From assembly GCA_044892505.1 (NCBI GenBank), contig CM097882.1:393142001-393206000 (forward strand): a DNA stretch of 64,000 bases, given 5' to 3'. Below are positions 2,891 through 48,884 of the stretch, piece by piece; position 1 is the stretch's first letter; each line of letters begins with the position of its first letter. The notes beneath the pieces are model-generated. The model did no database searches, was not told where the DNA came from, and was given only the letters and a program-made list of their open reading frames with translations. Made by a program: the position numbers and the translations under genes. The DNA is from Schmidtea nova (lineage: Eukaryota).

Positions 2891-3821
2891 ATTATTTTTT
2901 TAAATAATATAATAAATAATAAATAATATCAAATTTTAGAAAAATCAAATCTGTCTGTAACGGTGGAAGAATAACTCAAAGAAAAAAAAAACTTCTTCCG
3001 TACTCTTTGTCTGATATTAATATCTTCATTAGGATTTGTTGAATATGAATTCAAACAAAAAAAGAATAAAAATTGATTTTAAATGAATCAAATAATTATA
3101 TATTTTAATTGATATTTAAATAAACATTTGTCATTTTNNNNNNNNNNNNNNNNNNNNNNNNNNNNNNNNNNNNNNNNNNNNNNNNNNNNNNNNNNNNNNN
3201 NNNNNNNNNNNNNNNNNNNNNNNNNNNNNNNNNNNNNNNNNNNNNNNNNNNNNNNNNNNNNNNNNNNNNNNNNNNNNNNNNNNNNNNNNNNNNNNNNNNN
3301 NNNNNNNNNNNNNNNNNNTAAATAATAGTGANNNNNNNNNNNNNNNNNNNNNNNNNNNNNNNNNNNNNNNNNNNNNNNNNNNNNNNNNNNNNNNNNNNNN
3401 NNNNNNNNNNNNNNNNNNNNNNNNNNNNNNNNNNNNNNNNNNNNNNNNNNNNNNNNNNNNNNNNNNNNNNNNNTAATAATTAATGATAATGATTAGAAAA
3501 TAATAATGATTAATAATAATGATTAATAATAATGATGAATAATAATTAATAATAATGATTAATAATAATGATTTTTAATAATTAATAATNNNNNNNNNNN
3601 NNNNNNNNNNNNNNNNNNNNNNNNNNNNNNNNNNNNNNNNNNNNNNNNNNNNNNNNNNNNNNNNNNNNNNNNNNNNNNNNNNNNNNNNNNNNNNNNNNNN
3701 NNNNNNNNNNNNNNNNNNNTTGTGATACCCAGTGCAAATCCAAGTGATGTAATATCCAGTGTACCAGGAATGGTATTTAACAAAGTTTTTTCGACTGTTT
3801 TTTTAAATGTTCGCGTGTTCT

Positions 3822-3868
3822 GCATAGCACTGATGAGAGCTAAAAGTTCGAAACTAGTCTGTTTTTGG
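3822..3868 (+). ncRNA. Type I hammerhead ribozyme, copy 1
   Basis: ATAGCA-CTGATGA-GAGC TAAAA GTTC-GAAA-CTAGTC-TGTTTT. Predicted cleavage after C3859. Stem II has one G-U pair. Confidence 0.85.
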
Positions 3869-4330
3869 CGATTTGCACTGGGTATCACAAAGCTTTACTT
3901 AATAATAATGAATAATAATAACTAATAATAATAATTAATGATAATAATAATAAATAATAATAATAATTAACAATAATATAATGATAATGNNNNNNNNNNN
4001 NNNNNNNNNNNNNNNNNNNNNNNNNNNNNNNNNNNNNNNNNNNNNNNNNNNNNNNNNNNNNNNNNNNNNNNNNNNNNNNNNNNNNNNNNNNNNNNNNNNN
4101 NNNNNNNNNNNNNNNNNNNNNNNNNNNNNNNNNNNNNNNNNNNNNNNNNNNNNNNNNNNNNNNNNNNNNNNNNNNNNNNNNNNNNNNNNNNNNNNNNNNN
4201 NNNNNNNNNNNNNNNNNNNNNNNNNNTTGTGATACCCAGTGCAAATCCAAGTGATGTAATATCCAGTGTACCAGGAATGGTATTTAACAAAGTTGTTTCG
4301 ACTGTTTTTTTTTAAATGTTCGCGTGTTCT

Positions 4331-4377
4331 GCATAGCACTGATGAGAGCTAAAAGCTCGAAACTAGTCTGTTATTGG
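4331..4377 (+). ncRNA. Type I hammerhead ribozyme, copy 2
   Basis: ATAGCA-CTGATGA-GAGC TAAAA GCTC-GAAA-CTAGTC-TGTTAT: complete core, perfect stem II, 6-bp stem I, palindromic ACTAGT stem III. Predicted cleavage after 4368. Confidence 0.92.
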
Positions 4378-4937
4378 CGATTTGCACTGGGTATCACAAA
4401 GCTTTACTTAATAATAATGAATAATAATAATTAATAATAATAATTAATGATAATAATAATAAATAATAATAATAATTAACAATAATATAATGATAATGNN
4501 NNNNNNNNNNNNNNNNNNNNNNNNNNNNNNNNNNNNNNNNNNNNNNNNNNNNNNNNNNNNNNNNNNNNNNNNNNNNNNNNNNNNNNNNNNNNNNNNNNNN
4601 NNNNNNNNNNNNNNNNNNNNNNNNNNNNNNNNNNNNNNNNNNNNNNNNNNNNNNNNNNNNNNNNNNNNNNNNNNNNNNNNNNNNNNNNNNNNNNNNNNNN
4701 NNNNNNNNNCATTAATAATAATCATTAATAATAATGATTAATAATAATGATTAATAATAATGATTAATAATAATGATTAATAATTAATAATAATAATACA
4801 TAATAATAGTAAATTAAAATAATAATTAATGATAATGATTAGAAAATAATAATGATTATTAATAATTTTGAAAAAAATTTGTCGGATGAGTATTTGTTTT
4901 TAACAAGTAAAGCTTTGGGATACCCAGTGCAAATCCC

Positions 4938-4983
4938 CAATACCAGACTAGTTTCGAGCTTTTGGCTCTCATCAGTGCTATGC
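4938..4983 (-). ncRNA. Type I hammerhead ribozyme, copy 3 (minus)
   Basis: Reverse strand reads ATAGCA-CTGATGA-GAGC CAAAA GCTC-GAAA-CTAGTC-TGGTAT. Cleavage between 4946 and 4945. Stem I has one G-G mismatch. Confidence 0.85.
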
Positions 4984-5341
4984 AGGAGACGCGGAAATTT
5001 CTCTCCGCGCCAGGTAAGTATAAAACAAAGTCGAAAGATTTTTGTTATATACTATACCTGGTACACTGGATAAAACATCACTTGAATATGCAAGGTCCTA
5101 CAGATAATCTGTAACTTGCAAACATGGCGTATGAATTTCATTTTCGCCTCTGTGCGCTAAAAGCGTTCAACAGGAGCTGTTTGCAAGCGCACCCGACTGC
5201 CTTAGCTTCATTATTTCATTATTTTCATTTTCATTATTTCAATTACTTGAAATATCTTTTGAAAAAAACATTTGTCGGATGACTTATTTGTTTTTAACAA
5301 GTAAAGCTTGTGATTTTTTGTGATACCCTGTGCAAATCCCC

Positions 5342-5386
5342 AAAAGCAGACTAGTTTCGAGCTTTCGGCTCTCATCAGTGCTAAGC
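5342..5386 (-). ncRNA. Type I hammerhead ribozyme, copy 4 (minus)
   Basis: Reverse strand reads TTAGCA-CTGATGA-GAGC CGAAA GCTC-GAAA-CTAGTC-TGCT. Cleavage between 5349 and 5348. Stem I has G-C where the plus copies have G-U. Confidence 0.88.
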
Positions 5387-5783
5387 AGGAGACGCGGAAA
5401 TTTCTCTCCGCACCAGGTAAGTATAAAAAGTGGGAACAACTTTGTTAAATACCATTGTTAGTTCACTGGATATCACAAAACTTGAAAGCGCAAGGTCTTA
5501 CAGATAAACTGTAACTTGCAAACATGGCGTATGAATTTCATTTTCGCCTCTGCGCACTAAGAGTGTTCAACAGAAACTGTTTGCAAGCGCACCTGACTGC
5601 CTTAGCTTTATTATTTCAATCACTTGAAATATATTTTGAATAACATTTTTCTGATGACATTTTTGTCTTTGACAAATAAAGCTTTGTGATACCCAGTGCA
5701 AATCCAAGTGCAAATCCAGTGTACCAGGAATGGTATTTAACAAAGTTGTTTCGACTGTTTTTTTTTAAATGTTCGCGTGTTCT

Positions 5784-5830
5784 GCATAGCACTGATGAGA
5801 GCTAAAAGCTCGAAACTAGTCTGTTATTGG
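5784..5830 (+). ncRNA. Type I hammerhead ribozyme, copy 5
   Basis: Same sequence as copy 2. Predicted cleavage after C5821. Confidence 0.92.
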
Positions 5831-6492
5831 CGATTTGCACTGGGTATCACAAAGCTTTACTTAATAATAATGAATAATAATAACTAATAATAATAATTAA
5901 TGATAATAATAATAAATAATAATAATAATTAACAATAATATAATGATAATGNNNNNNNNNNNNNNNNNNNNNNNNNNNNNNNNNNNNNNNNNNNNNNNNN
6001 NNNNNNNNNNNNNNNNNNNNNNNNNNNNNNNNNNNNNNNNNNNNNNNNNNNNNNNNNNNNNNNNNNNNNNNNNNNNNNNNNNNNNNNNNNNNNNNNNNNN
6101 NNNNNNNNNNNNNNNNNNNNNNNNNNNNNNNNNNNNNNNNNNNNNNNNNNNNNNNNNNNNNNNNNNNNNNNNNNNNNNNNNNNNNNNNNNNNNNNNNNNN
6201 NNNNNNNNNNNNNNNNNNNNNNNNNNNNNNNNNNNNNNNNNNNNNNNNNNNNNNNNNNNNNNNNNNNNNNNNNNNNNNNNNNNNNNNNNNNNNNNNNNNN
6301 NNNNNNNNNNNNNNNNNNNNNNNNNNNNNNNNNNNNNNNNNNNNNNNNNNNNNNNNNNNNNNNNNNNNNNNNNNNNNNNNNNNNNNNNNNNNNNNNNNNN
6401 NNNNNNNNNNNNNNNNNNNNNNNNNNNNNNNNNNNNNNNNNNNNNNNNGTTATTTTTAAAATAATGATTAATTTACAAATCATCCAACTAAC

Positions 6493-10389: not shown

Positions 10390-12354
10390 CTAGTTATCCT
10401 TTGCGAATAGGTTTTGAGCTGCTCTCTTGCGAATATGCGCTTGCTCGTTCTTGATGCGATCTTCCACTATATCTGGTCTATAACTGACCACCAATGTTTC
10501 GCGTGTTTCGACTTCCTTATATACCAAAGACGAAATCACGTATGATATTCCGTTGGCCTCCAATACGCCATAGTAAGGGAAGTTTGAAACCGATGATTGG
10601 TGTACCGGTTTCCCGTCGTATTCTTTTATCCGAGGTACCCAATTTCTCTCTGGTCGCTGCCAAAAACTAGGGTCTTCATTGTCCAAATCCTGGGGTGTCT
10701 TTGCTGAATTTCCCGTTCCAACGAAATCCCCTTCTCTTATAATAATAGGTTCGCCCTTAACCTCAGGAATCTGTTCCATATCGGGTGGAACGAATGCTGT
10801 TTCGATTAAATCTTTGTCTTCCGTCGAGAGGAGATTTGGTACTTTCTTTTTGATCTTTAGATCTTGTAACCTTACAACAGGTTCTTGACTTTTCTTCGGG
10901 GATGACTTTTCCACTGAAGTCAACTTTTGAAAAGTCTTAGTAACTTTTTCCAAGAGCTTGTTCTCTTTCTTTGGTGGATTTTCTGGCACGATCTTTGTAA
11001 TTGTACGGCTGTCTCCGTGTAAAGTTAAACGCATCTCTGTTTGCTCCTCACCCTCGCTTTCGCAGGTGGCATAATCGTCTTCATCAGCTAATGATATAGC
11101 TGGAGGGGATAGTGATTCTTCCTCAACTATCTTTTGTAATTTGGTTGATAATGGTTGTTCCTGGGGTAAGCTCTCAATAGCTTTCCTTTTACTCGTTTCT
11201 TGTGGCTGTATTGTATGAACCATTTTGACTTCTGATGTAATCGTCCCACTACGATTACCTGGGGTGATGTCATCTACCCAAACTTCTCTCAGTTTGAGGT
11301 AAATATTACGTGTCGTTTCCACGTCATTTTCCGTTTTCAGATCTGAACGGTTTAGTTCTTCCTTTTCGAGAATTGACTTTGATAAATACGCGAGTCGATA
11401 ATGTCCGTTAGATTTCTTTAGTTCTCTCGCTTCCAGACATTTTGCTGCTCCTAGTTCTCTAATTCCCAAAACTCGTTGAGGGTGTAACTGAACTGCTTCC
11501 AAGAAATCATTGACTTGGAGACCTATTAGGATTTTCCCATCACATAATTTTCTAATACGGTCTGCGCAATCCTCTCCGTCAAATTGTCCGATAATTTCTT
11601 TTTCGGTCATACCATGCGCGTGCGATTGGTAATGTTTGACCTGGTTTCTGGGTGTAACCACCGTGTTTAATATTAAATCACCACAGTAGTTTGCTATCGA
11701 AACAGCCACCAAAGCTGGCTTTAAATAATCTCGCAAAGTTGCGTAATGCGCTGCAATAAATATTGACAATCTATCTTCTTGATTGGGGTGCAGATTCATC
11801 CGAACAAAGGATTTGAATGACTTGAGATCGTTCTCATTCACATTATAGGTCCAGGCAGGTTCGTTTTTCCACAATGATTGCACTGCCTTGCTGGGTTCCA
11901 AAATCTCTAATACCACAATAGTATTATATCCGTCACATTGGATGGAGATATTCTTTTCTCTGCCATCTCCGTTACTAATTTCTAGAGTTGATTCTGGTTG
12001 AAGTAGGATGGGTCCTGTGGCTCCTGCCATGAAGATTGTAAAGGGTTTATTGATCGCGTGAATCAGGAGATGGTGAGTAAATGTTGATCTGTTAAATTCC
12101 GCCATGTGTTCAGTCAACCGGGTGTTCTCACGGCTGGTGATTGTGACTATGCACATTTGTCTCTTAGGCGATCCGAGAAACTTAAAATTGTTCGGGATGC
12201 CGGTGCAGTGCCCGTAATACCAATAGCGACGACCTTTCCGTGCTTCTGCGGATATCGCTTTTTCGATGTTTCGATAAATCAGTTTTTCCTTCTGTACTGT
12301 TTGCACATCGATAGTGCTATAACGCTGCTTGTATTGTGACACTTGATGCTTCAT
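10390..12354 (-). CDS. ORF3 of element 1: N-terminal conserved domain, REX4/ISG20-like DEDDh exonuclease-fold domain (catalytic residues altered), low-complexity linker and conserved C-terminal domain
   Basis: VSIANYCGDLILNTVVTP...HYQSHAHGM...RKLCDGKILIGLQVNDFL...RELG...YRLAYLSKSIL matches the REX4/ISG20 pattern. Start placed at ATG 12354 because a conserved splice acceptor sits just upstream (the ORF track starts at 12426). Confidence 0.75.
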   Translation of the reverse strand: MKHQVSQYKQRYSTIDVQTVQKEKLIYRNIEKAISAEARKGRRYWYYGHCTGIPNNFKFLGSPKRQMCIVTITSRENTRLTEHMAEFNRSTFTHHLLIHAINKPFTIFMAGATGPILLQPESTLEISNGDGREKNISIQCDGYNTIVVLEILEPSKAVQSLWKNEPAWTYNVNENDLKSFKSFVRMNLHPNQEDRLSIFIAAHYATLRDYLKPALVAVSIANYCGDLILNTVVTPRNQVKHYQSHAHGMTEKEIIGQFDGEDCADRIRKLCDGKILIGLQVNDFLEAVQLHPQRVLGIRELGAAKCLEARELKKSNGHYRLAYLSKSILEKEELNRSDLKTENDVETTRNIYLKLREVWVDDITPGNRSGTITSEVKMVHTIQPQETSKRKAIESLPQEQPLSTKLQKIVEEESLSPPAISLADEDDYATCESEGEEQTEMRLTLHGDSRTITKIVPENPPKKENKLLEKVTKTFQKLTSVEKSSPKKSQEPVVRLQDLKIKKKVPNLLSTEDKDLIETAFVPPDMEQIPEVKGEPIIIREGDFVGTGNSAKTPQDLDNEDPSFWQRPERNWVPRIKEYDGKPVHQSSVSNFPYYGVLEANGISYVISSLVYKEVETRETLVVSYRPDIVEDRIKNEQAHIRKRAAQNLFAKDN

Positions 12355-12540
12355 ATCTGAAAGAAAAATAATTAACGTTAATATCAGATATACTGATATG
12401 CCAATATTGGCTAAAAAGAAATGCATAAATCTCGATTTACGGGATCTACTTATGCTGTAAGTTAATGCTACTCGGAGCTCAACAAGATTATAGATTTTAA
12501 TATATATATAAATACAAATATGTGATTTTATCTGTAATTG

Positions 12541-15500
12541 TCATAATCTCGTCATCATAATCCCATCAACCGACTCAATAGCCTGGCTGAAGAATAATTT
12601 CATCCAAACTCCCATTGCTATCAATGTAGTGATCATAGCTAATACTGCTGACGTAATAATCCATACCCCAACGGGTAATTTTCCCAAGTGAGTAATGGGG
12701 TTTACTTCATTAATTTCACACTGACAACTTTTAATATAGCTTTCTGTTGATACTGTTGGTTTTACCATTTTCAATCCTTTCAATCTCTGCCATATTGCAG
12801 GATGAATGACGTAACTCTCTTTCCGTATTAAGGATGTAACCGATTTCGTTGTCGTCGATGATTGAGGTAATTTCAAAGAGATTACTTCATAAAATACCTC
12901 ATTCCATTCATCGACTCCGGGCTTTTGTTTATTATTCATATAAGTGATATGAGCTTCCCACTCCACTGAACTGTTCCACTTAAGATTTTGTTTCTCAATA
13001 TCTTCATTTAGCCACAATTCTTGTACTATTTCCTTGTCGGAATGGATTTCTATCTTTACTCTATCCACTCCTTGTTTTGGTTGGCTGAAGGTAATCATAC
13101 CTTGTTGGATATTTATCTTAACTTTCCTTTTGAAATCTGCTGTCTTCAACTTCCATTGTGACTTTGAAAAATCTGACCATCGTCCAAACATAAAATGTTG
13201 TACAAGTATATCTAATAAATATTCCTTTTCTGCTCGTAAGTCCTTTATGACTTTCACTCTTGTGTTTGAATCCAATGTAAAATGGAAACAACGTCGTTCA
13301 CAAAACGAGAACTTGAATTTGGTATCATTTTCAGCTAATGATATTATCCTAAATTCCTGGAAAGATCTTCTGAATGCGAGATCTTGGATTTGTACCGCTG
13401 TTGGAACAAATGTCTTTACACAGGATATAAGGCAACTTATTATTACCAAAAACGTAACTGATTTTGGCACGCCTCTTGATCGTAATGGATATCTGTCTGA
13501 GACTGGTTCTGACCCTTTATCCTCCTTTTTCTTAATCGGATCTTTCTCCGTGACCGCAACTTTCTTGCATCTGTTAGCATGTACCATTATTGGTTCAGCT
13601 TTTCTATTTGCTACTAATTGCAAGATTAAATTCGTGTCTGTGGTTCTCAAAACCTCATATGGTCCTTTGAAGTTTCTCATTAATTTAGGTGATAAGCCCT
13701 TTTTATTATAATGGCTTTCCAACATCACCTTGTCTCCAACTAACATGCCATGTCCTTTGGCTTTCTTATCATGATAATCTTTCGACGCTTCCTGACTGAA
13801 TTTTATACTAAGACCTGCTTTTGTCCATGCTTCTTGCATTCTTTCTCTCATTTCCATGAGATAATCCTCTTGGTCTAAATACTGCGTTGCTTTTGGGAAA
13901 AACAACAAGTCTATAGGCATTTTACTTTGCCTTAAATACATGAGATAGAACGGCGTTTGTCCCGTACCCTCATGAACAGCATTTCTGTATGCGAATAGGC
14001 ATGATGGAATATGTATATCCCAATCCGTTTGCCCTGAATTTACGTATGATGCTAGCATATTTGCGAGCGTTCCGTTAAATCTCTCTACCAATCCGTCTGT
14101 TTGTGGATGGTATGGAGAGGTATTCAGTTTTAAAATGTCGAAATAATCATTTATTCCTTTTAACAGATTACTCATGAAATCTGCTCCTCTATCTGTAAGT
14201 AGTTTTGTAGGTACTCCATACCTAAAAACAATTTGCTCTACGAAAATCCTGGCTATCGTATCTGCCTTGTGATTCGGTATCGGATAAGCCTCCGGCCATT
14301 TCGTCAAGTAATCGCAAAATACCAATATGTATTTGTTACCACTATTTGATTCTTTGAATGGCCCTAAAACATCCATTGCCGTCATTTCCATCGGTGTGGA
14401 TGGTACTGGCATTGGTTTCATTGGCACATGCGGTTTCTTCCCCGTATTTCTCCTGGTGATACAGATCTTACATGTCTGACACCATTCCTGTACGTCTTGT
14501 TTGATTGTCGGCCAGAAATATTTCTGCTTCAACCTTGACAATGTTTTCCTGGAAGACAAATGCCCTCCCAGTGCTCCATCATGATATTGTAACATCAAGG
14601 CTTCCCGATATTTCTTAGGGACCATTATGACATTATCCCTTACGTCTACATATTTGACTAATCCTTCTTCTAGAATAAATTTGTCTCGATTTTTCTCCCA
14701 ATATTTATTAAATTCCGTCGGTATGAACTTTGCTTCTAAAGCCTGTCTGATTTGGTTTATCTCTTCATCCGATTGTTGTGCTGCCATTAAATCCGCGAGT
14801 CTATTTGCTTCTCTTGTAAGTGCGAAGATTGTTCCTTCTAATCTTCCTTCTTTGATATCTTCTGCTTCATCACCTTGGTCCATTCGCGAAAATGCATCTG
14901 CATTCCCATTTTGATGTCCTTTTCGGTAATGTATTTCGATGTCATATGGCTGCAAGATCAATGCCCATCTAACCAACTTTGATGTATCCATAGTATGCTT
15001 TGTTAACCACTGTAATGGTCTATGATCCGTATACACAATGATCTTTCGACCCCATAAATATGTCCTGAATTGGTGTATAGCATACACAATTGCTAATGCT
15101 TCTAATTCGATAACTGCATAATTCTTTTCATGTGGTTTTAATCCTCTGCTAGCATACGCTATGGCATATTCGTCTCCTAGGTCATCTCTTTGACCTAACA
15201 CAGCACCAATACCCCGAGTGCTGGCATCTGTCATGACCAAAAATTGTTTCTCAAAATCTGGAAACCGTAATATAGGAGGTTCCACGAGCATCCTCTTTAG
15301 CATATCAAATGCTTCCTGTTGCTCTTTTCCCCATACAAATTTGACATTTTTGCCCTCTAATTGTGTTAAAGGAAATGCTATTGCCGAAAAGTTCCTGATG
15401 AACTTCCTGTAATATCCCACTAAGCCCAAAAACCCTTTTATATGTTTAACAGTCTTTGGCTCTGGAAAATTCTTTGCTTTCTCAACATTTGCTGGATCTG

Positions 15501-18500
15501 GCTTTACTCCATCCTTCGAGATAATGTGACCGACATAGACTACTTCTGATTCGGCCCATTTACATTTTGATGGTTTTACCTTGAGATTTGCGTTTATCAA
15601 CCTTTTGAATACGTCCTCTAAATGTTCTAAATGCTTTTCCAAATCTGGAGAGAATACTATGATGTCATCTATGTATACCATTGCATGATGAACATCCATT
15701 AACATTAGATTCATTGCTCTTTGAAACGTTGCCGGCGCTCCTGTGAGACCAAATGGCATTACTGTATATTCGAAATGTCCCAGGCTTGTAGAAAAAGCCG
15801 TAATTGGTATTGTCTCCTCTTTTAACTTGATTTGGTAAAATCCCTTCTGAGCATCCATCACTGAAAAATATTTTGAATTTCTCATACGACCGTAGATGTA
15901 ATCCAGTAATGGTAAGGGGTGACTATCCTTGCAAGTGGCTTCGTTTACCATTCGATAGTCGTTGCATAGTCGTACTGTTCCATCCTTTTTAGCCACTACT
16001 ATCATTGGTGACTGGTATGGTGATTTACTATGCCTGATGATGTTATGTTTTAACATCAGTTTTACCTGCTTATCGACAGGTTCTTCCAAGCTAAACGGAA
16101 TTCGATACGGTCTCAGTTTTATTGGTTTCGTATTGTTAAGAACAATTTCATGTTCCAACAAATTCGTCTTTCCCAGATCATATTCGTGCTTGGCGAATAC
16201 TTGATCATATTTTCTTAATAACATGTTGACTTGGATATTCTCTCTTCGTGAAAGAGCTTTACTATTTGCCGTTGGCGCATCATAGTACTCGATGTCTGGT
16301 TCTCTATTCTCTGCCTTCACTGTCAGGACAGATCCCCCAATCGATAATTGATCCGACTTTGATACTCTCCCTACTCTTGTATCTGGATACAATTTTAATG
16401 GTTTTATATCTAAATTGGCTACCCGAATTGGTATTCTGCCATTTTCAACTTTACCAACGCTATGCGTAATTGATAGATTATATTTTGCTGAGAACCTTTC
16501 ATCTGGTTCGAATACAACTTCTCCTTCCCACTGTTCGCTAGTGGACACGAAACATACTGTTTCTGCTCTGGGTGGTATTATCATTGTATGATCGATGAAA
16601 ACTGTATCATCATTATAAACTTTTCTTTTCTTACCGATTGATCTAACTAACAATCCGGTAGCACAATCGAACACAACTCCTTTTAATCTTCTTAAAAGAT
16701 CCATTCCTAGTAGACATTCTACTGGACAAGTTCTCATGACTATAATATCATGACGAAATTCTTGGTCACATAGCTTGATGTTACAAGCTAGAGTACCAAT
16801 AATATTCAATGATGTGCCTCTAGCACCTGTTAGCGAAACTCTTGAGGTTTCCATTGATTCCAATTCTTTTAGATTTAATAGTGTTGCCTCTATGATAGTG
16901 CCGTCTGCTCCTGAATCTATCACTGCATTAACTGTGTGTCTGTTTATTTTTATCTTTATCATGGGTTTCTTATCCAAGTTCACCCCATTTGCCATCAAAA
17001 TAGTAGCATGCGTTATCCCGATGGTATTTGCTCTGAATTTCTCTGCTTCATCTTGTTCGGTATCACTCAATTTTGGATTATATTCCTTGAATTTAGCTTT
17101 TATTGCTTCTAACGACTCGATAGGATACAGTTTCCCTTCATTTTCTAACGATAGTGATATGCTTTTACCTGTTTCTCGAGCATCTTTATCGCGAATTTGT
17201 TGATGTTTAGAAGTGTAAATTTTGTTTCTTGGAATGGTTAAAGCATAATTTAGTTTGCCCTCTCCTGATGTCTTTTGAAACTCTGGCGATTCCCCCTTTG
17301 GCGCTGTTGGTAAGCTTCTAAGATACGGCAATTGCATATATCTTGGGCTTCTTTTCAATCTAGGCGATGTTGTATTGATTGCAAATTTCTGGTCTGCACT
17401 ATCGTCTTCATCTTCTGAAATCATACTTTTGTCGAAAATCTGTTTTGTCGCTTCGTAAGGTGGTTGATAATCCCGATATTTCATTTTCCTTAATTGATGA
17501 TTCGGTTTTTTATTGTAGTTTCTTTTTCGACTTCTACTTTGCCTCTGAACTGTATTAAGAGAGTCTCCATTACCTCCTCCTTCCGAATTGTTATCGTCCC
17601 GATAACTTGTATTACCCTCCATTTCGATTCCAATAATCTCGTGTTTTACCAAGCTTCTCTGTTTGATTGTCTTTATTTCTTTACGATGATGTTTAAACAA
17701 TGCAAATTCCGCACACATAGGACACAATCCTAGTATCAACTTCCAAGACCATCCACCGATTTTGAATATGCTGTATGTGGAAATTAATTGTGTTATTATT
17801 AACTTTAGAATTACGAATATTGCATATATTCCTGAGCAGCCTGCCACGAAAATACCAAAATTGGTAAACCTTCCCCATATTTTCATCATCACATTTTTAG
17901 CTGCTTCTTTATAATGATCTGGACCGAATAATAAATTGTAATCTGGTCTCATTTCGTTTGCTTGGTAAATTGTTCTTATGATTTCAGTGATACATCTTTC
18001 TCTTACTTGAGGGAATAGCAATGTCTGTCTTGCCTCCTCAATATCTGCTGGAGTGTAAATTCCTCCTTGTGATAATTCATCGAGTGATTTAAATTCCATG
18101 TTTTCCTCGAGTTTCGTGACTTCCAATGTTTCCACCTTTCTATTAGATGGTTTTCTGTCAGGTAATGAGATCCATCTATCATTTACCTTGTATAACGGTG
18201 ATATTGCTGGATTGCAAATTGAAGGTTGAGGCTTTTGTTTTTCATCCAAAAGTCTCCTCGTAACTGGCATTACAAATCGTATTTTGTTTTGATATGACAC
18301 TGGTAATTCTAGAGTACATTCATTATACCGAGTTAATTGTACCTCTATGGGTTGACATTGATAGCTGTATATAGCTTCCCCCATAATTCTGCCAAACATT
18401 CCATCTTCTAGCAACATAGGTGTCACTAGATCCGGATTCACGATTGATATCGCTAATCGATTTCGAACTATTTCGCGATTTAGTTTGCAATCATTGAGTA

Positions 18501-19044
18501 TTACTTCCTGATACATTTCCTGCATTTGTCCTTGCAGATCATGATATAAATAATCTATTTTATTATTTATATAGTTCGTGATTTTGATATCCTGGCTGTG
18601 AATATTCTTGGCTTTTTGGATAAATGTTTTTGACAAATATAATCCTTTATAGTTGGTCTCATACACCACTTTTCCGCATTTTGTCTTCTTATCTTTTCTG
18701 ACAAATCTGATTGCATCTTTCTTATCTTCTGATACTAATACTAGAGGTGTGATTTCTTCACTAATATCCTCTTTTTGCTGTTTGTTGATCCTTTTCAACG
18801 TCTTTTCTTTATCCCAAATTCTTTCTCTTTTGGGTAAATCTCGATACTTTGTCCCGTTCAACTTATGGAAATTAATTTTCTTTAGTAATGACAATTCGCA
18901 ATGGTCTAGTATTTGATCGTATAATAATGTAATGACCCCTGTTCTGCAGCTTCCAAATTTCGCAAGGCACTGAGGGTGTGCCATTAATCTTCCTGATAAT
19001 ACATCGAAAGTCCCTTCGTATTCTCTTAATTCGATTGAATAGTC
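12541..19044 (-). CDS. pol: Second part of element 1 polyprotein: C-terminal part of glycoprotein, aspartic protease, RT, RNase H, integrase, second type I membrane protein
   Basis: VIDSGA (~16910), PYRIP/CNDYR/YIDD RT motifs, TDAS...ELEALAI...TDHRPL RNase H, H-x6-H...C-x2-C and D,D(35)E integrase with GPY motif. In frame with the upstream ORF across TAG 19045-19047. Confidence 0.95.
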   Translation of the reverse strand, partial: DYSIELREYEGTFDVLSGRLMAHPQCLAKFGSCRTGVITLLYDQILDHCELSLLKKINFHKLNGTKYRDLPKRERIWDKEKTLKRINKQQKEDISEEITPLVLVSEDKKDAIRFVRKDKKTKCGKVVYETNYKGLYLSKTFIQKAKNIHSQDIKITNYINNKIDYLYHDLQGQMQEMYQEVILNDCKLNREIVRNRLAISIVNPDLVTPMLLEDGMFGRIMGEAIYSYQCQPIEVQLTRYNECTLELPVSYQNKIRFVMPVTRRLLDEKQKPQPSICNPAISPLYKVNDRWISLPDRKPSNRKVETLEVTKLEENMEFKSLDELSQGGIYTPADIEEARQTLLFPQVRERCITEIIRTIYQANEMRPDYNLLFGPDHYKEAAKNVMMKIWGRFTNFGIFVAGCSGIYAIFVILKLIITQLISTYSIFKIGGWSWKLILGLCPMCAEFALFKHHRKEIKTIKQRSLVKHEIIGIEMEGNTSYRDDNNSEGGGNGDSLNTVQRQSRSRKRNYNKKPNHQLRKMKYRDYQPPYEATKQIFDKSMISEDEDDSADQKFAINTTSPRLKRSPRYMQLPYLRSLPTAPKGESPEFQKTSGEGKLNYALTIPRNKIYTSKHQQIRDKDARETGKSISLSLENEGKLYPIESLEAIKAKFKEYNPKLSDTEQDEAEKFRANTIGITHATILMANGVNLDKKPMIKIKINRHTVNAVIDSGADGTIIEATLLNLKELESMETSRVSLTGARGTSLNIIGTLACNIKLCDQEFRHDIIVMRTCPVECLLGMDLLRRLKGVVFDCATGLLVRSIGKKRKVYNDDTVFIDHTMIIPPRAETVCFVSTSEQWEGEVVFEPDERFSAKYNLSITHSVGKVENGRIPIRVANLDIKPLKLYPDTRVGRVSKSDQLSIGGSVLTVKAENREPDIEYYDAPTANSKALSRRENIQVNMLLRKYDQVFAKHEYDLGKTNLLEHEIVLNNTKPIKLRPYRIPFSLEEPVDKQVKLMLKHNIIRHSKSPYQSPMIVVAKKDGTVRLCNDYRMVNEATCKDSHPLPLLDYIYGRMRNSKYFSVMDAQKGFYQIKLKEETIPITAFSTSLGHFEYTVMPFGLTGAPATFQRAMNLMLMDVHHAMVYIDDIIVFSPDLEKHLEHLEDVFKRLINANLKVKPSKCKWAESEVVYVGHIISKDGVKPDPANVEKAKNFPEPKTVKHIKGFLGLVGYYRKFIRNFSAIAFPLTQLEGKNVKFVWGKEQQEAFDMLKRMLVEPPILRFPDFEKQFLVMTDASTRGIGAVLGQRDDLGDEYAIAYASRGLKPHEKNYAVIELEALAIVYAIHQFRTYLWGRKIIVYTDHRPLQWLTKHTMDTSKLVRWALILQPYDIEIHYRKGHQNGNADAFSRMDQGDEAEDIKEGRLEGTIFALTREANRLADLMAAQQSDEEINQIRQALEAKFIPTEFNKYWEKNRDKFILEEGLVKYVDVRDNVIMVPKKYREALMLQYHDGALGGHLSSRKTLSRLKQKYFWPTIKQDVQEWCQTCKICITRRNTGKKPHVPMKPMPVPSTPMEMTAMDVLGPFKESNSGNKYILVFCDYLTKWPEAYPIPNHKADTIARIFVEQIVFRYGVPTKLLTDRGADFMSNLLKGINDYFDILKLNTSPYHPQTDGLVERFNGTLANMLASYVNSGQTDWDIHIPSCLFAYRNAVHEGTGQTPFYLMYLRQSKMPIDLLFFPKATQYLDQEDYLMEMRERMQEAWTKAGLSIKFSQEASKDYHDKKAKGHGMLVGDKVMLESHYNKKGLSPKLMRNFKGPYEVLRTTDTNLILQLVANRKAEPIMVHANRCKKVAVTEKDPIKKKEDKGSEPVSDRYPLRSRGVPKSVTFLVIISCLISCVKTFVPTAVQIQDLAFRRSFQEFRIISLAENDTKFKFSFCERRCFHFTLDSNTRVKVIKDLRAEKEYLLDILVQHFMFGRWSDFSKSQWKLKTADFKRKVKINIQQGMITFSQPKQGVDRVKIEIHSDKEIVQELWLNEDIEKQNLKWNSSVEWEAHITYMNNKQKPGVDEWNEVFYEVISLKLPQSSTTTKSVTSLIRKESYVIHPAIWQRLKGLKMVKPTVSTESYIKSCQCEINEVNPITHLGKLPVGVWIITSAVLAMITTLIAMGVWMKLFFSQAIESVDGIMMTRL

Positions 19045-22000
19045 CTAGATATCTACTACAAAACTTACCAACTCCGATCCGCGAGTTTTCTTTCTTCCCG
19101 TACAGGTACCATCTGATCCAATTGATCCTCCTCTTGTAATGGTTACTCCCAGTGTTTTCCCTACTTCCGCGGCGATGGTTACCTCGTTATCGATTCTTAA
19201 AGTACCTTTTCGAAAGGCATCCAGACAATCCTCTGGCAATATGTTGACAGGTCTAGGTATTAGAGTGGCTGATAGAAAAGCCGTGTAGCTGTGTGAACCA
19301 CAATAATATTCAAATGTCGCTCTTTGGACTCTACATTCTCTTATCTTAGTTCTGAAGAATTCACTTTCTTGATAGACATAGTATTCGACCTTTTCTCCTG
19401 TTTGGACTTTCTCTGGATATGCCTCTTTGCACTCAATTGCATCTACGAGCGAATATATCCGAGCTAACTTTGGATCACTGCAATCAAACGCTGTCATTGT
19501 GTTTGTCTGTTTCATTATCCCCATCATTACTAAAAACATTAATATCATATTCGTCATATTCCCCATTCCTCCATTTCCGAGGTGGTTGTTATTCATAGCC
19601 TCTTCCACAAATTCATATCGTGGTTTATGTTTCTCCTCTTCCCAGAAGTTATTTTCACTCATCCACGTTCCGAGATAATGCTCCGTTATCTCCGTGATCT
19701 GGTCTATTTCTCGATTAATAAGTTTCTTCTCATTGCCTGCGCGGGCTAAGGCGTCTTGAATCAACATAGATAATGCTGTCACTATTTTTCCTTTAGATAA
19801 CCCATCTTGTATGAGTGTCTCTAACATATTCTGTATCTCGTTTTGAGGTACCCCTTTAGGTAATCTCCTCATCGTCTTCGCGATTGTCTGTGTCACTTTA
19901 TCCACTTGAATTCCTTTAATCCGAGTGATCTGCCATTCCGGCTTTAATATTCCTATGATCTGTTTTAATCTCTTCCATGTCAGAGATTTTTCTGGTATAT
20001 GTACTCCCTCGTCTCTCATATCAACATCCCTGGCTATTCCTGACAGGGTTTTCATCTGAACCTGTTTAATGGTTTCTTGGTTTAATTGCTCCGTTGGGGG
20101 AGGTTTCATTTGATCTTTCCTAGGCCTTCCTCGCCTATCTTTCTTTGTCTGCCATGCTGGCCTGACATTTTCTACCGCCTGAGAAGTTGAAGCTCCCACG
20201 TTAGTTTCCTCATTATTGAGTCTGATTTTCTCTTCTCCGTGATTATCGGCATCGATATCTACATTAAGTGGTTGTGTCTCAACGTTACCAATGACCATTT
20301 CATCTGGTAACCGTAATGCTGACCATTGAGATTCAGGTGGCTCTACGGGAATGATTGCTACCGTTGTAGTTTCAAATGGTAGACATCCCACATCTACTAA
20401 ATATTCATCATCATCCACTTGCCCTCCATGAATCATAATCAAGAATATACCGGTAGTCTGCCCAGTATCTATTAAATCTTTTCTCAACGTTATCACTTTG
20501 CTAAAACAACGATATAATCTCGTCATGGGTTCTTTTCCCAATATTCGAATGTCTAAAGTTATCATGCCTTGTCGGTGTGCTTGATGACGTATTGCTGTTC
20601 CATTTTTCCTCATTAACATTTTTATTTCTGTTTGAAAAGAACTAGTTTCTTTTACTACAGGTAGTAATATAGGAATTATACTCTCCAATGATTCTACTGG
20701 TATGCGCAATACCAACATCCAGTCTAATATTTCCTTGATTGTTTCTCCATCCCTCGGAGATTTCTGCAACTCTATCTTCAGACGTTGCTCTATTTGTTGG
20801 ACTTCCTCCAACTGTGCAATTTCCATTTGTGTGAGTAGAAACACACTGTCTTGATCCACTACTGGGACCGATATTCCTGTCAGTTTTGTTGTGAGTTTCG
20901 TTACCCTTCCTGGTAATACACCATTTTGTAGTAGTGTTTCCCCAACTACTAACTTTTCTCCATATAGATAAAAATCATATCTATTATGTTTCAATTTCGT
21001 CATTGTATCTGACAACTTATCTGTTCGACATCTTACATTCATGTCGATGTTAAACTCCTGCTCCTGAGGAAGTTTTATGTTTAAATGCGAATCCTGAAGA
21101 TCCCATTCATGTTCCATTGCTGTCCCTATCTTTCGTAGGATTCTATGTATGTCGCTATGATACCTTGGATCATCTTCGACCTGAGATATTAACTGTAATA
21201 TCTTTCCAATTTCGCTATTCTTGATATCACCTTGTGATAATTTCTCTAATTCTCTAGTCAGTCTCTGCTGATACTCATATCTGGAATCCACCAGTTTTAA
21301 ACATTTTGCTAGGGTATCTGACCCTTTCTTGGCCTTTGTTTCCTTGAACAAAGCCTGGTCGAACTCGCTCAGTATGGTACTCATACTGAGTTCGTCATCA
21401 TTATCAGAATTTGTTTCTGATTCTATTACCTCATGATTCTCGCTGCTGGAATCCATGGGTTCACTATTTCCTTGCTCATCTGTGTAAGCATCATGATTTT
21501 TCTCAGCTGAAATCATCAAAACTGTTCCTTGCCCAACTGTGTGAGCATCATCGCTTTCCTCAATGGGATTCATTATAACTGTTCCTCGCCCATCCATGTG
21601 AGCATGATTTTTCTCAGCTGAAATCATAAAAACTGTCTCTTGCCCAACTGTGTGAGTCTCATTTATTTCTTCAATTGTATTCATCAAAACTGTTCCTCGC
21701 TCATCTGTGTGAGCATGATTTTTCTCAGCTGAAATCATAAAAACTGTATCATCTCGAACCATTAGCCGTGCTAATCGATTTTTCTCCTCCTGGATTTCCA
21801 TTTCCAGTTGTTGCAAATACGTCAATTCTTTATCGTGATTGACCATGAACGTAGTTTTTGGCTTGCTGACATTACCACTATTGGTAGTCCTACTATTCGT
21901 ATGATTACTCTGATTTTGAGGACACGACCTCAGGATATGCCCGAATTTTCCACACCCGTGGCATTTTATCTTTCCTGATGAATTTACATCATCCCTTTTT

Positions 22001-22806
22001 ATATTAAAATTCCCATTCGTTGGGAGATTCCTAACTCTACAAACGGAAGCAACATGCCCTCTGCGTTTGCATTTATCACACTGCAAGTTCGTGACTCTAC
22101 AGTTCTCAACACTATGATTATTCATACCACATTTAGTACACTGAATACCCCTACGAGTATCAGCTACCTTCTTACTGTGGCAATCTTTTGATATATGCCC
22201 CTTCTTATGGCAGTTAAAACATTCAATTGCTGGCTTCTCATTATTTACCATAAATGAGGTAGCCTTTTCTAAGCTGCTTTCGATTACGACAGCTTTTCTT
22301 GTTAATTCCCAAAAATCATCTCCCGTGTGGAGAATCAATGCATTTCTCATAACATTTGTGAATCCAGCTAATAATTGGTCTTTAACCATAGCTTTAGTTG
22401 CATCATTCCAGGTAGTTCTGAGCCCAAATGCTCTTTCTGCTAATAACAATAATTGGTAGGAAAATTCTCCTACATGTTCATTTGCATTCTGCTTCCTGTG
22501 ATAAAACTGTTGTCGGAAAATTCTACTTGAATCTCCCGGTAATATTCTAGCTGTTAGTGATTCTCTCATCTTTTCCCATGTAGCTGGTTTATCTGCTGCT
22601 GGTAACGCCATAATATCATTGTAGTTTTCCCTTGCCATACCCTTAAGGTAAATTGGCAATCTTTGTATCATTATCGCATCTGGATACCCATAGGCCTTTG
22701 CCATCTGATAATACTCTGACATAAACTCCGGAAATTCCCCTGGATCTCCGCTAAATGCCTTGACAGGTAAAGCGGGATATCTAGCAAAAACATTTTCCTC
22801 CACCAT
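19045..22806 (-). CDS. gag: First part of element 1 polyprotein: Gag with four CCHC knuckles, accessory domains, signal/TM segment and N-terminal part of glycoprotein
   Basis: Retrotransposon Gag core (FSGDPGEF...YLKGMA...RKQNANEHVGEF), four CX2CX4HX4C knuckles, then MILMFLVMMGIM followed by AFDCS...CGSHS. Confidence 0.9.
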   Translation of the reverse strand: MVEENVFARYPALPVKAFSGDPGEFPEFMSEYYQMAKAYGYPDAIMIQRLPIYLKGMARENYNDIMALPAADKPATWEKMRESLTARILPGDSSRIFRQQFYHRKQNANEHVGEFSYQLLLLAERAFGLRTTWNDATKAMVKDQLLAGFTNVMRNALILHTGDDFWELTRKAVVIESSLEKATSFMVNNEKPAIECFNCHKKGHISKDCHSKKVADTRRGIQCTKCGMNNHSVENCRVTNLQCDKCKRRGHVASVCRVRNLPTNGNFNIKRDDVNSSGKIKCHGCGKFGHILRSCPQNQSNHTNSRTTNSGNVSKPKTTFMVNHDKELTYLQQLEMEIQEEKNRLARLMVRDDTVFMISAEKNHAHTDERGTVLMNTIEEINETHTVGQETVFMISAEKNHAHMDGRGTVIMNPIEESDDAHTVGQGTVLMISAEKNHDAYTDEQGNSEPMDSSSENHEVIESETNSDNDDELSMSTILSEFDQALFKETKAKKGSDTLAKCLKLVDSRYEYQQRLTRELEKLSQGDIKNSEIGKILQLISQVEDDPRYHSDIHRILRKIGTAMEHEWDLQDSHLNIKLPQEQEFNIDMNVRCRTDKLSDTMTKLKHNRYDFYLYGEKLVVGETLLQNGVLPGRVTKLTTKLTGISVPVVDQDSVFLLTQMEIAQLEEVQQIEQRLKIELQKSPRDGETIKEILDWMLVLRIPVESLESIIPILLPVVKETSSFQTEIKMLMRKNGTAIRHQAHRQGMITLDIRILGKEPMTRLYRCFSKVITLRKDLIDTGQTTGIFLIMIHGGQVDDDEYLVDVGCLPFETTTVAIIPVEPPESQWSALRLPDEMVIGNVETQPLNVDIDADNHGEEKIRLNNEETNVGASTSQAVENVRPAWQTKKDRRGRPRKDQMKPPPTEQLNQETIKQVQMKTLSGIARDVDMRDEGVHIPEKSLTWKRLKQIIGILKPEWQITRIKGIQVDKVTQTIAKTMRRLPKGVPQNEIQNMLETLIQDGLSKGKIVTALSMLIQDALARAGNEKKLINREIDQITEITEHYLGTWMSENNFWEEEKHKPRYEFVEEAMNNNHLGNGGMGNMTNMILMFLVMMGIMKQTNTMTAFDCSDPKLARIYSLVDAIECKEAYPEKVQTGEKVEYYVYQESEFFRTKIRECRVQRATFEYYCGSHSYTAFLSATLIPRPVNILPEDCLDAFRKGTLRIDNEVTIAAEVGKTLGVTITRGGSIGSDGTCTGRKKTRGSELVSFVVDI

Positions 22807-43300: not shown

Positions 43301-44316
43301 AGTGTCAGAAATGTCAACAATCAAAGATAAGCCGTCATACTAAGACCTCTCTCGGAGATATTCCAACAACTGGGCGATTCAAAACCATTCACATTGATCT
43401 CGTGGGACCATTACCCCCCAGTAAACAATAAGAGATTCATCCTTACAATGATTGATAGATCAACGTCGTGGGGGGAAGCAATTCAAATTAATGAAATCTC
43501 AAGTACTAGCGTGGTAACAATACTGAATAGAGAATGGATAAGTAGATACGGTGTACCTGAAGTTATCATCAGTGATCAAGGGTTGCAATTTGAATTTACC
43601 TTATTTAACAATTTTTTCAGAAATATGGGCATTGAACTTAGACGAATCACAGCATACCATCCACAATGCAATGGGAAGGTAGAAAGATGGCATAGATGTC
43701 TCAAGAACTCGCTCAAGGCTCATGCGGCAGTCGCAAATAAAACATGGGCTCATGATCTCCCGACAGTACTACTAGGTTTACGCAGCTGTTGCACCTCAGA
43801 TAACTCACCATCACCAGCTGAACTCGTGTTTGGAACTAAACTCAGATTACCTGGCGATTTATCGATCATAACCTCAGAAGTTAACGAAGAAGAATCCAAT
43901 ATCCCAACCATCTACAATCCTATACCAAAAGAAAAGAAGATAGATCCAAAACAAAACAGTTTTATACAGAAAGAACTGGCCACATGCACCAGGGTATGGT
44001 TACAGAAGCCAATCACCAAAGGACTCGATCTTCCATATGATGGTCCATTTAAAGTAGTGGAAAGATCGCCAGACCTCAAGACATTCAAAATATCAATAAA
44101 CGACAAAAACAAAATCGTCTCTGCTGATCGACTGCGAGCAACAATAGAGCCGGAACCCAATCTTTGAGGGGAGTTATGTTGGATTTAATTAACTCATTTT
44201 GTTAATAATTTCCAAACTTCTTTAAAATATATATAAACAAGTAAAATTTGTTTATATAAGAATTGTTATAAAATACAAAATTCAAATTATGTCTACTTCT
44301 TTTAATGAATGTAACA
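40361..44316 (+). mobile_element. Defective compact Ty3/Gypsy element (CsRN1-like) with ~140 bp LTRs
   Basis: LTRs 40361-40503 and 44177-44316, TSD GCCTA, PBS TGGTGTCAGAA (tRNA-Leu type), PPT GAGGGGAG. gag ~40520-41237. pol ~41171-44167 (DSGA, YVDD, RH, IN) is broken by frameshifts near 42200 and 43420. Confidence 0.93.
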
Positions 44317-48800: not shown

Positions 48801-48843
48801 ATATTAATAATTAACAACAAATGACAATCCAAATATATATTTT

Positions 48844-48884
48844 GCACAATATATTTCGAGAACTTAATTCTCTTCATCAGGTGC
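48844..48884 (-). ncRNA. Variant type I hammerhead ribozyme (family 2, minus)
   Basis: GCAC-CTGATGA-A-GAGAAT TAA GTTCTC-GAAA-TATATT-GTGC. Confidence 0.75.

What the first reader, a model, noticed from the sequence alone, without database searches (positions are those of the whole stretch)
3474..5951. Retrozyme-like array: five dimer-type hammerheads that could release a 403-nt monomer
Seen: five complete CUGAUGA/GAAA cores. Stem II is conserved while its loop varies (UAAAA, CAAAA, CGAAA), and stem III is the self-complementary ACUAGU. The two minus copies are head-to-tail, with predicted cuts at 5349/5348 and 4946/4945, giving a 403-nt unit. Established: minimal type I hammerheads with a palindromic stem III (newt satellite 2, Penelope pLTRs, animal retrozymes) cleave as dimers and can yield circular RNAs. 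Inference: this is a non-autonomous retrozyme family copied by a Penelope-type RT, and the inverted 3' piece at the start of each plus unit is the Penelope-style 5' inversion.
Basis: partly seen in the sequence, partly recalled or inferred. Interest (0 to 1): 0.8.

Follow-up and report, generated by a model that had tools for sequence, protein, structure and literature searches.

The report
Old hammerhead retrozyme copies in microsatellite
The five ribozyme motifs are real, but they are old, partly duplicated copies of a very abundant non-coding repeat of a published kind (animal "retrozymes") that inserts the way Penelope-like retrotransposons do, so this locus is an ordinary member of a known class.

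Summary
All five hammerhead cores are present at the stated places, and the two minus-strand cut sites are 403 nt apart inside uninterrupted sequence. The motif is the usual animal type I hammerhead: helix I 6 bp, helix II 4 bp, helix III 2 bp plus a 2-nt palindromic loop, so it should act only as a dimer.

It belongs to a non-coding family with 3,985 perfect cores in this 1.25-Gb genome. The main period is 380-382 nt and arrays reach at least 20 units. Copies lie in (AAT)n or (TA)n microsatellites, are 5'-truncated, and often sit 5'-to-5' in pairs. This matches the published non-LTR retrozyme and Penelope-like insertion pattern.

The window copies are old and degenerate. Unit A is 91% identical to the main family, and units A and B are only 80% alike. 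The three plus units share one inversion junction and 89-90 nt of flank, so they reflect one event copied locally or by the assembly, not three insertions.

No autonomous element with this ribozyme was found. The dominant Penelope-like family shares the target preference but not the sequence. The scan had already noted this family elsewhere in the genome.

The parts
4946..5348 (-). Unit A: the full 403-nt unit between the two predicted cut sites. It is of main-family type and carries a private 23-nt AT-rich insertion.
   Evidence: 100% self-match and 91% identity to the 380-nt main family. Main-type state at 12 of 12 diagnostic sites. Fold -117.2 kcal/mol, z -6.4.
5349..5705 (-). Unit B: the 5'-most unit of the minus array. 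It is truncated about 12 nt after the position of a cut site and is of the older subfamily type.
   Evidence: 80% identity to A, 85% to the main family, and up to 89% to 357-362 nt copies elsewhere. Old-type state at 10 of 12 diagnostic sites.
4866..4945 (-). Terminal partial unit ('tail') after unit A's ribozyme. This is the 3' end of the minus array and it abuts AAT-rich repeat.
   Evidence: Matches unit positions 6-92 at 83%. It lacks the 9-nt insertion present in A's own head.
4946..4975 (-). Hammerhead core of unit A (loop II CAAAA); cut predicted at 4946|4945.
   Evidence: Exact pattern match. Helix I has one G-G mismatch.
5349..5378 (-). Hammerhead core of unit B (loop II CGAAA); cut predicted at 5349|5348.
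   Evidence: Exact pattern match. Inner helix I is reduced to 4 bp.
5706..5862 (+). Plus unit 3: a 5'-truncated old-type copy joined head-to-head (5'-to-5') to the minus array at 5705/5706. Its core is at 5792-5821.
   Evidence: Its 3' end ...AAGCTTTACTT is followed directly by AAT-rich repeat.
4227..4409 (+). Plus unit 2: the same block as plus unit 3, beginning directly after an N run. Its core is at 4339-4368.
   Evidence: 97% identity to plus unit 3, with the same junction and the same flank.
3720..3900 (+). Plus unit 1: the same block, beginning directly after an N run. Its core is at 3830-3859, with a G.U pair in helix II and a weakened helix I.
   Evidence: 94% identity to plus unit 3.
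5863..5951 (+). AAT-rich right flank that is duplicated together with the plus unit. The other copies are at 3901-3989 and 4410-4498. All three end at the same base before an N run.
   Evidence: One difference in 89-90 nt among the three copies.
4710..4865 (.). AATAATAATGATT-type 13-nt minisatellite flanking the 3' end of the minus array. A related stretch lies at 3474-3589.
   Evidence: Repeat family D2. Family copies elsewhere also sit in (AAT)n or (TA)n.

Best explanation
The region holds old copies of one abundant, non-coding retroelement family of the animal 'non-LTR retrozyme' kind.

Shown here. The locus lies in an AAT-rich micro/minisatellite. It consists of a minus-strand partial tandem (unit B, unit A, then a terminal tail) joined 5'-to-5' to a short 5'-truncated plus-strand copy, with both element 3' ends pointing outwards into the repeat. 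This is the twin head-to-head layout described for Penelope-like insertions. A block of at least 270 bp (plus copy and flank) then appears three times, by local duplication or through the assembly.

Inferred life cycle, following published retrozymes. Arrays are transcribed as multimers. Pairs of hammerheads fold together through the palindrome ACUAGU into a double hammerhead and cut after GUC. Helix I brings the two ends of the strongly self-paired monomer together, and a host RNA ligase may close the circle. A Penelope-type RT/GIY-YIG protein acting in trans nicks AT-rich microsatellite DNA and primes on A/U-rich tracts 50-90 nt after the cut site. It copies the circular or multimeric RNA into in-register tandem cDNA, often from both nicks.

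The window copies themselves are probably dead or weak. They are 9-25% diverged from the main family, and their helix I is mismatched or shortened.
For: Family size and layout:
- The exact core occurs 3,985 times in the genome, against 0 for the reversed control. Arrays are spaced 380-382 nt and reach at least 20 units.
- 1,762 first-look matches to the unit.
- The unit is non-coding and 37% GC.

Insertion pattern:
- Insertions sit inside (AAT)n, (ATT)n or (TA)n. Their 5' ends vary (unit positions 229-351), their 3' ends fall 50-92 nt after the cut, and short inverted tail pieces lie at the 5' side with different junctions in different loci.
- All 6 adjacent opposite-strand pairs among the first 100 listed cores are (-,+), i.e. 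5'-to-5'.
- Units within an array are 99.5-100% identical in four of five arrays (98.95% in a two-unit array), against 98.3% between arrays.

Selection on the RNA:
- Across 14 diverged copies the ribozyme (unit positions 341-380) and the first 20 nt after the cut are 96-97% conserved. Neighbouring segments are 64-85% conserved.
- Monomer fold: -124.3 kcal/mol, z -7.2, with helix I closing the ends.
- For the main family, the double-hammerhead fold costs only 1 kcal/mol relative to the unconstrained dimer optimum (-38.2 vs -39.2).

Candidate partner:
- A Penelope-like family (856-aa RT + GIY-YIG ORF, 3,136-nt tandem period, 23,006 first-look matches) has its 3' ends in (AAT)n or (ATT)n in 10 of 15 cases and forms head-to-head pairs.

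Published descriptions that match: PMC7229834, PMC4209133, PMC8557442, bioRxiv 10.64898/2026.07.22.740005.
Against: - No RNA evidence.
- No autonomous element carrying this ribozyme or any similarity to the unit was found. The dominant Penelope-like family shows no match to the unit.
- Rfam does not recognise the motif at its curated thresholds.
- For the window copies the double-hammerhead fold is 3.6 to 14 kcal/mol worse than the best fold.
- Units A and B belong to different subfamilies although they are in register. A simple rolling-circle copy of one circle does not predict this.
- N runs hide the left sides of two plus blocks.
Confidence: 0.8

Rival explanations
1. The three plus units are not three genomic copies. 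Only one head-to-head locus exists, and the two N-flanked 270-bp blocks are allelic or collapsed-repeat variants that the assembler or scaffolder placed nearby.
For: Blocks 1 and 2 begin at the same base after an N run. All three blocks end at the same base before an N run, and they share the junction and flank. Complex tandem/inverted Penelope-type structures are reported to break short-read assemblies (PMC8557442).
Against: The blocks differ by private substitutions and indels: 4 in block 1, 1 in block 2, and a 4-nt deletion plus 2 substitutions in block 3. They are therefore not exact duplicates. Real tandem duplication within a minisatellite is just as plausible.
Confidence: 0.3
2. The units are leftover terminal repeats (pseudo-LTRs) of an autonomous hammerhead-bearing Penelope-like element, not a separate non-autonomous family.
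For: Penelope-like elements carry hammerheads in their terminal repeats and form partial tandems (PMC4209133, PMC8557442). In frogs, retrozymes resemble these terminal repeats (bioRxiv 10.64898/2026.07.22.740005).
Against: Arrays of 2 to at least 20 units have an exact 380-nt period with no ORF between units. The dominant Penelope-like family has no similarity to the unit in 30 loci or in a full tandem. None of the roughly 40 loci examined links the unit to an RT ORF, apart from one unrelated neighbour (L059).
Confidence: 0.08
3. It is a satellite DNA that spread and grew only by DNA-level processes (unequal crossing-over, segmental duplication). The hammerhead is a passenger with no role in spread.
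For: The arrays are tandem, units within an array are nearly identical, and there is clear local DNA duplication in this window.
Against: There are thousands of dispersed short insertions on all three chromosomes. They have variable 5' ends, outward-facing 3' ends at a few preferred positions, and microsatellite targets. The ribozyme is conserved well above the rest of the unit across subfamilies.
Confidence: 0.05
4. The motifs are chance matches or inactive look-alikes with no ribozyme function.
For: Rfam scores are far below the gathering cut-off. No activity data exist.
Against: Five matches against 0 expected in the window, and 3,985 against 0 in the genome. All core positions, three helices and the dimer-type palindrome are present. 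Decayed old copies show mutated cores, as expected only if intact cores are kept by selection in the propagating lineages.
Confidence: 0.03

Closest known systems
Animal non-LTR retrozymes (Cervera and de la Pena 2020, PMC7229834)
   Same: Tandem repeats in the reported 170-400 nt monomer range with one type I hammerhead each, low GC, no ORF, no LTR/PBS/PPT, a strongly self-paired monomer RNA, and Penelope-like elements in the same genome.
   Different: circRNA expression is not shown here. Most invertebrate retrozyme ribozymes are reported to cut well as monomers, whereas this one has the dimer-only helix III. The strong (AAT)n/(TA)n target preference and the frequent twin head-to-head insertions are documented here for the retrozyme itself.
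Newt satellite 2 and axolotl retrozymes with dimer-acting hammerheads (Forster et al. 1988 as cited in PMC4209133; PMC7229834)
   Same: Units of about 330-400 nt, a helix III too short to form in one molecule, and a palindromic loop that allows a double hammerhead in tandem transcripts.
   Different: A different animal group (an AT-rich genome with three large chromosomes; species unknown to me) and no sequence relationship tested. The copy number here is in the thousands, not the roughly 10^5 reported for axolotl.
Hammerheads in the terminal repeats of Penelope-like elements (Cervera and de la Pena 2014, PMC4209133; Craig et al. 2021, PMC8557442)
   Same: A type I ribozyme followed by a short tail at the element 3' end, partial tandems, an inverted 5'-truncated copy at the 5' side, and microsatellite insertion bias.
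   Different: The published Penelope-type motifs are 'min' variants: a long helix II, an extra base after A9, and a short helix I. The retrozyme here has the canonical 6/4/2-bp layout. The coding Penelope-like family in this genome carries only a min-type look-alike with U at core position 3.
Plant LTR retrozymes (PMC4918200)
   Same: A non-autonomous retroelement whose ribozymes excise a unit that can circularise.
   Different: Plant retrozymes have type III hammerheads in LTRs, PBS/PPT, 600-1000 nt circles, and Gypsy-type mobilisation. None of these applies here.

Membership tests
Hammerhead ribozyme, type I | Conserved core: C3 U4 G5 A6 N7 G8 A9, G12 A13 A14, the A15.1-U16.1 pair, and H17 (not G). 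| tested here: met
   All five copies read CUGAUGA ... GAAA-C-UA-GU-C.
Hammerhead ribozyme, type I | Three helices around the core, with helix I open. | tested here: met
   Helix II is 4 bp in all copies (one G.U in plus unit 1). Helix I is 6 bp plus 5 outer bp in the main family, 6 bp with one G.U in plus units 2 and 3, 5 of 6 bp in unit A, and 4 bp in unit B. Helix III is 2 bp around a 2-nt loop in cis, which is not feasible, but 6 bp in a dimer.
Hammerhead ribozyme, type I | Score at or above the curated Rfam threshold. | tested here: not met
   No hit at gathering score. The best hit is HH9 at 20.2 bits against a cut-off of 52, E 0.12. The missing helix III hairpin explains the low score.
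Hammerhead ribozyme, type I | Self-cleavage after H17. | not testable with these tools
   Needs in vitro transcription or RNA end mapping.
Animal non-LTR retrozyme | Short tandem repeats (about 150-450 bp), each with a type I hammerhead, from dimers to long multimers. | tested here: met
   403-nt period in the window. In the genome the period is 380-382 nt and arrays run from 2 to at least 20 units.
Animal non-LTR retrozyme | Non-coding, low GC, no LTR/PBS/PPT. | tested here: met
   GC is 37-38%. The longest stop-free frame in a trimer is 60-78 codons. Flanks are microsatellite, not LTRs.
Animal non-LTR retrozyme | Highly self-paired monomer RNA. | tested here: met
   z -7.2 for the main unit and -6.4 for unit A against dinucleotide shuffles. 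Two compensatory pair changes occur among 7 diverged copies.
Animal non-LTR retrozyme | Expressed as linear and circular unit-length RNAs. | not testable with these tools
Non-autonomous partner of a Penelope-like element | Penelope-type insertion architecture: 5' truncation, partial tandem, inverted 5'-truncated copy, microsatellite bias. | tested here: met
   compared with the description in PMC8557442.
Non-autonomous partner of a Penelope-like element | An RT + GIY-YIG element present in the same genome. | tested here: met
   RVT_1 + GIY-YIG ORF at window 54855-55979. The full ORF is 856 aa, the family is very abundant, and it shares the (AAT)n target.
Non-autonomous partner of a Penelope-like element | Sequence kinship between the unit and the terminal repeat of an autonomous element. 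| tested here: not met
   No similarity to the one Penelope-like family examined (30 loci plus one full tandem).

The most novel reading that the evidence does not exclude
The minus array is a mosaic. An old-subfamily unit (B) and a main-lineage unit (A) are joined in exact register within the conserved ribozyme region, and the tail after A again looks old-type. This would be a footprint of joining through a unit-length intermediate. Either an RT jumped between different self-cleaved or circular monomer RNAs, or a circular monomer (cDNA or extrachromosomal DNA) integrated by one crossover into a resident copy. If so, arrays can grow by adding foreign monomers at existing copies, and not only by rolling-circle copying at new sites.
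Probability: 0.15. Interest if true: 0.5.

Novelty: new member of a known kind. Interest (0 to 1): 0.25.

Why it matters
It adds one more well-delimited animal retrozyme family of about 4,000 intact ribozymes, this one with a dimer-type hammerhead.

In this genome the insertion signatures are unusually easy to read: microsatellite targets, twin 5'-to-5' copies, and near-identical units within arrays. That makes the genome a convenient place to test whether Penelope-type enzymes copy circular ribozyme RNAs.

The locus in this window adds little. Its copies are old and partly duplicated, and the same family has already been reported by this scan elsewhere in the genome.

Tried and rejected
1. 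Rfam at gathering score gave nothing. In E-value mode only weak HH9 matches appeared, so Rfam cannot decide the case.
2. Plain minimum-energy folding of 63-nt ribozyme segments pairs CUGA with UAGU and does not return the catalytic fold. I replaced it with a constrained double-hammerhead evaluation.
3. I looked for the autonomous partner in three ways: the Penelope-like ORF in the window and 30 genomic copies, a full tandem copy (L062), and blastn of the unit against them. There was no similarity. One neighbouring retrozyme copy (L059) is a coincidental insertion.
4. My first regex reported that this Penelope-like family has no hammerhead at all. A closer look found a min-type look-alike with U at core position 3, so I dropped the claim that the family lacks a hammerhead.
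5. I tried to identify the organism by exact-protein look-up of the 854-aa ORF. It is not on record, and I did not pursue the species.
7. I considered whether 5' ends of copies cluster at the cut site, which would be physical evidence of cleavage in vivo. The hit list is sorted by length and so biased, and the few junctions I could read are scattered (unit positions 229-351). I rejected this as untestable with the data on hand.
9. N runs: the alignment coordinates start 14 nt inside the N runs at 3706 and 4213. This hints that the runs are masks rather than physical gaps. I did not read those letters or use them.
Full report
**Observation**

The stated motifs are all present. The 30-nt pattern covering the core, helix II and the cut site matches five times in the window and never in shuffled sequence. 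A looser core pattern gives 5 matches against 0.22 expected. The plus-strand copies are at 3830-3859, 4339-4368 and 5792-5821. The minus-strand copies are at 4975..4946 and 5378..5349.

The minus-strand cut sites (after GUC) fall at 5349|5348 and 4946|4945, so they are 403 nt apart. Repeat analysis finds the same 403-nt period. The stretch 4710-5951 contains no N. Both minus ribozymes, the 403-nt unit and plus unit 3 are therefore in uninterrupted sequence, and the core claim does not depend on any gap.

Rfam does not call the motif at gathering score. The best sub-threshold hit is HH9 at 20 bits. The model expects a helix III hairpin that is missing here.

**The ribozyme**

Helix II is 4 bp (GAGC/GCUC) with a 5-nt loop that varies among copies (UAAAA, CAAAA, CGAAA). 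Helix III is A-C-[UA]-G-U: two pairs around a two-base loop. That cannot close in one molecule but gives six pairs between two copies. In the main family, helix I is 6 bp, then a small internal loop, then 5 more pairs. PMC4209133 describes exactly this layout as the canonical animal type I hammerhead, which works as a dimer in tandem transcripts. It is not the 'minimal' Penelope variant.

I compared a constrained double-hammerhead fold with the unconstrained dimer optimum:

| Copy | Double hammerhead (kcal/mol) | Unconstrained optimum (kcal/mol) |
|---|---|---|
| Main family | -38.2 | -39.2 |
| Unit B | -33.4 | -37.0 |
| Unit A | -30.0 | -36.4 |
| Plus units 2 and 3 | -21.8 | -31.3 |
| Plus unit 1 | -14.6 | -28.9 |

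The active fold is competitive for the main family and progressively worse for the window copies. Their helix I carries a G-G mismatch (A), is shortened to 4 inner pairs (B), or has lost its outer part (plus units).

**The family**

The window lies on a 612-Mb chromosome of a 1.25-Gb assembly. The exact core occurs 3,985 times in the genome, and the reversed control occurs 0 times. The main family has a 380-382 nt period, and arrays run from 2 to at least 20 units. The unit is 37% GC and non-coding. Its RNA folds to -124.3 kcal/mol (z -7.2), with helix I pairing the two ends of the monomer. Unit A of the window gives z -6.4.

Across 14 diverged copies, the ribozyme and the first 20 nt after the cut are 96-97% conserved, and a central domain is 92-96% conserved. 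The neighbouring segments drop to 64-85%. Among seven diverged copies the consensus structure is kept, with two compensatory pair changes. Old single copies elsewhere show mutated cores. Intact cores therefore seem to be maintained in the propagating lineages and not after insertion.

**How copies are inserted**

In the loci I read, copies sit inside (AAT)n, (ATT)n or (TA)n tracts, with the repeat on both sides. They start at different unit positions (229, 290, 338, 348, 351). They end 50-57 or about 92 nt after the cut, within A/T-rich tracts of the unit. Several carry a short inverted piece of the 3' tail at their 5' side, each with its own junction. Among the first 100 listed cores, all six close pairs of opposite orientation are (-,+), i.e. 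5'-to-5' with both 3' ends outwards. Units within an array are 99.5-100% identical in four of the five arrays measured (98.95% in a two-unit array), against 98.3% between arrays. That fits one template copied repeatedly.

These are the features reported for Penelope-like insertions: 5' truncation, partial tandems, an inverted 5'-truncated copy at the 5' end, and microsatellite bias (PMC8557442). They also fit the retrozyme model of tandem cDNA made from a circular RNA (PMC7229834).

**Candidate enzyme**

The window holds a 5'-truncated RT + GIY-YIG ORF at 54855-55979. Its family is very large (23,006 first-look matches), with an 856-aa ORF and a 3,136-nt tandem period. Its copies form head-to-head pairs, and their 3' ends lie in (AAT)n or (ATT)n in 10 of 15 cases.

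This family shares the retrozyme's target but has no sequence similarity to the unit. About 100 nt from its 3' end it carries a conserved min-type hammerhead look-alike with U at core position 3. Mobilisation by a Penelope-type enzyme is therefore a well-founded inference from architecture and co-occurrence. It is not a demonstrated link, and the kinship test used in the 2026 preprint (10.64898/2026.07.22.740005) is not met for this family.

**What this locus is**

On the minus strand, reading 5' to 3', unit B starts about 12 nt after the position of a cut site (5705). It is followed in register by unit A (5348..4946) and an 80-nt terminal tail (4945..4866) that abuts a 13-nt AAT-rich minisatellite. 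At 5705/5706 the array is joined 5'-to-5' to plus unit 3. This is a 155-nt copy truncated at CAAGTG that ends at ...AAGCTTTACTT, followed by AAT-rich repeat.

The three plus blocks (3720-3989, 4227-4498, 5683-5951) align with a mean column identity of 98%. They share the identical junction and 89-90 nt of non-element flank. Blocks 1 and 2 begin at the same base after an N run, and all three end at the same base before one. Independent insertions elsewhere have different junctions. The three blocks are therefore one event copied later, either by local duplication or by the assembly. Private differences show they are not exact duplicates.

The window copies are old:

- Unit A is 91% identical to the main family.
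- Unit B is 85% identical to the main family and at most 89% to any other copy.
- The plus units are 74-76% identical to the main family.
- Units A and B are only 80% alike.

**An unexplained detail**

I compared the window units at 12 sites that separate the main family from older copies. Unit B has the old state at 10 sites and unit A has the main state at all 12. The tail after A lacks the 9-nt insertion that A's own head has. Two units in exact register but from different lineages cannot be explained by decay in place. Possible causes are template switching, ligation of unlike monomers, a crossover with a circular monomer, or gene conversion. The evidence for the second switch rests on one indel.

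**Limits**

- I did not read letters in the N runs. Alignment coordinates begin 14 nt inside two of them, which suggests masking rather than physical gaps.
- The species is unknown to me.

**Verdict**

This is a new member of a known class, and the scan had already noted it on other DNA of this genome (s1-411042, s1-396006). Interest is low to moderate.

Noticed in passing
window 56311-56344 (+); L062 3760-3800: The abundant Penelope-like family has a conserved hammerhead look-alike in its 3' UTR: UUGACGA-G-GAUUAU-UUG-AUAAUC-GAAA-AUUUUC. It has a 6-bp helix II, an extra base after A9, a palindromic AAUU and a 4-bp helix I, but U instead of C at core position 3. It is present in 38 of 38 copies on hand.
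   Followed up: partly
window 48838-48880 (-) and 49728-49770 (+): A second, unrelated ribozyme element. Two outward-facing min-type hammerheads (CUGAUGA-A-GAGAA...UUCUC-GAAAUAUAUU) lie about 880 nt apart in a head-to-head pair inside AAT-rich repeat. The extra base after A9 is a published trait of Penelope-type motifs (PMC4209133). Copies also lie next to Penelope-like elements elsewhere (L036, L043).
   Followed up: partly
window 5008-5021 and 5411-5424 (read on the minus strand): Each unit carries AUACUUACCUGGCG about 35 nt upstream of the ribozyme core. From memory, this equals the 5' end of U1 snRNA, and its complement is a consensus 5' splice site. It is nearly universal in main-family copies. 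However, it lies in the least conserved stretch of the unit and is deleted in the plus units and in several old copies.
   Followed up: partly
window 10390-22806 (-): A giant Ty3-like retroelement with three long ORFs (678, 2147 and 1253 aa). It carries protease, RT, RNase H and integrase domains plus Monjiviricetes-type viral fusion glycoprotein domains. Another glycoprotein fragment lies at 35922-36734. Observed only.
   Followed up: no
window 40674-44167 (+): A second Ty3-like pol region, split over four overlapping ORFs (protease/RT, RNase H/integrase zinc domain, integrase core). It is probably a frameshifted old copy.
   Followed up: no
window 53497-53629 and 56340-56440: The truncated Penelope-like copy at 54855-55979 is bracketed by inverted copies of its own 3' end, with (ATT)n and a 577-nt N run between them. 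This is the same twin architecture as the retrozyme.
   Followed up: partly
N runs 3590-3719 and 3990-4226: The genome search aligned plus units 1 and 2 from coordinates 3706 and 4213, i.e. 14 nt inside the N runs. The runs may therefore be masks rather than physical gaps. The letters were not read.
   Followed up: no
unit positions 121-220 (e.g. window 5129-5228, minus strand): The central domain of the unit is 92-96% conserved across subfamilies. It contains a 10-bp inverted repeat (CUUGCAAACA / UGUUUGCAAG) and two compensatory pair changes. Its function is unknown; it could be a promoter or a protein-binding structure.
   Followed up: partly
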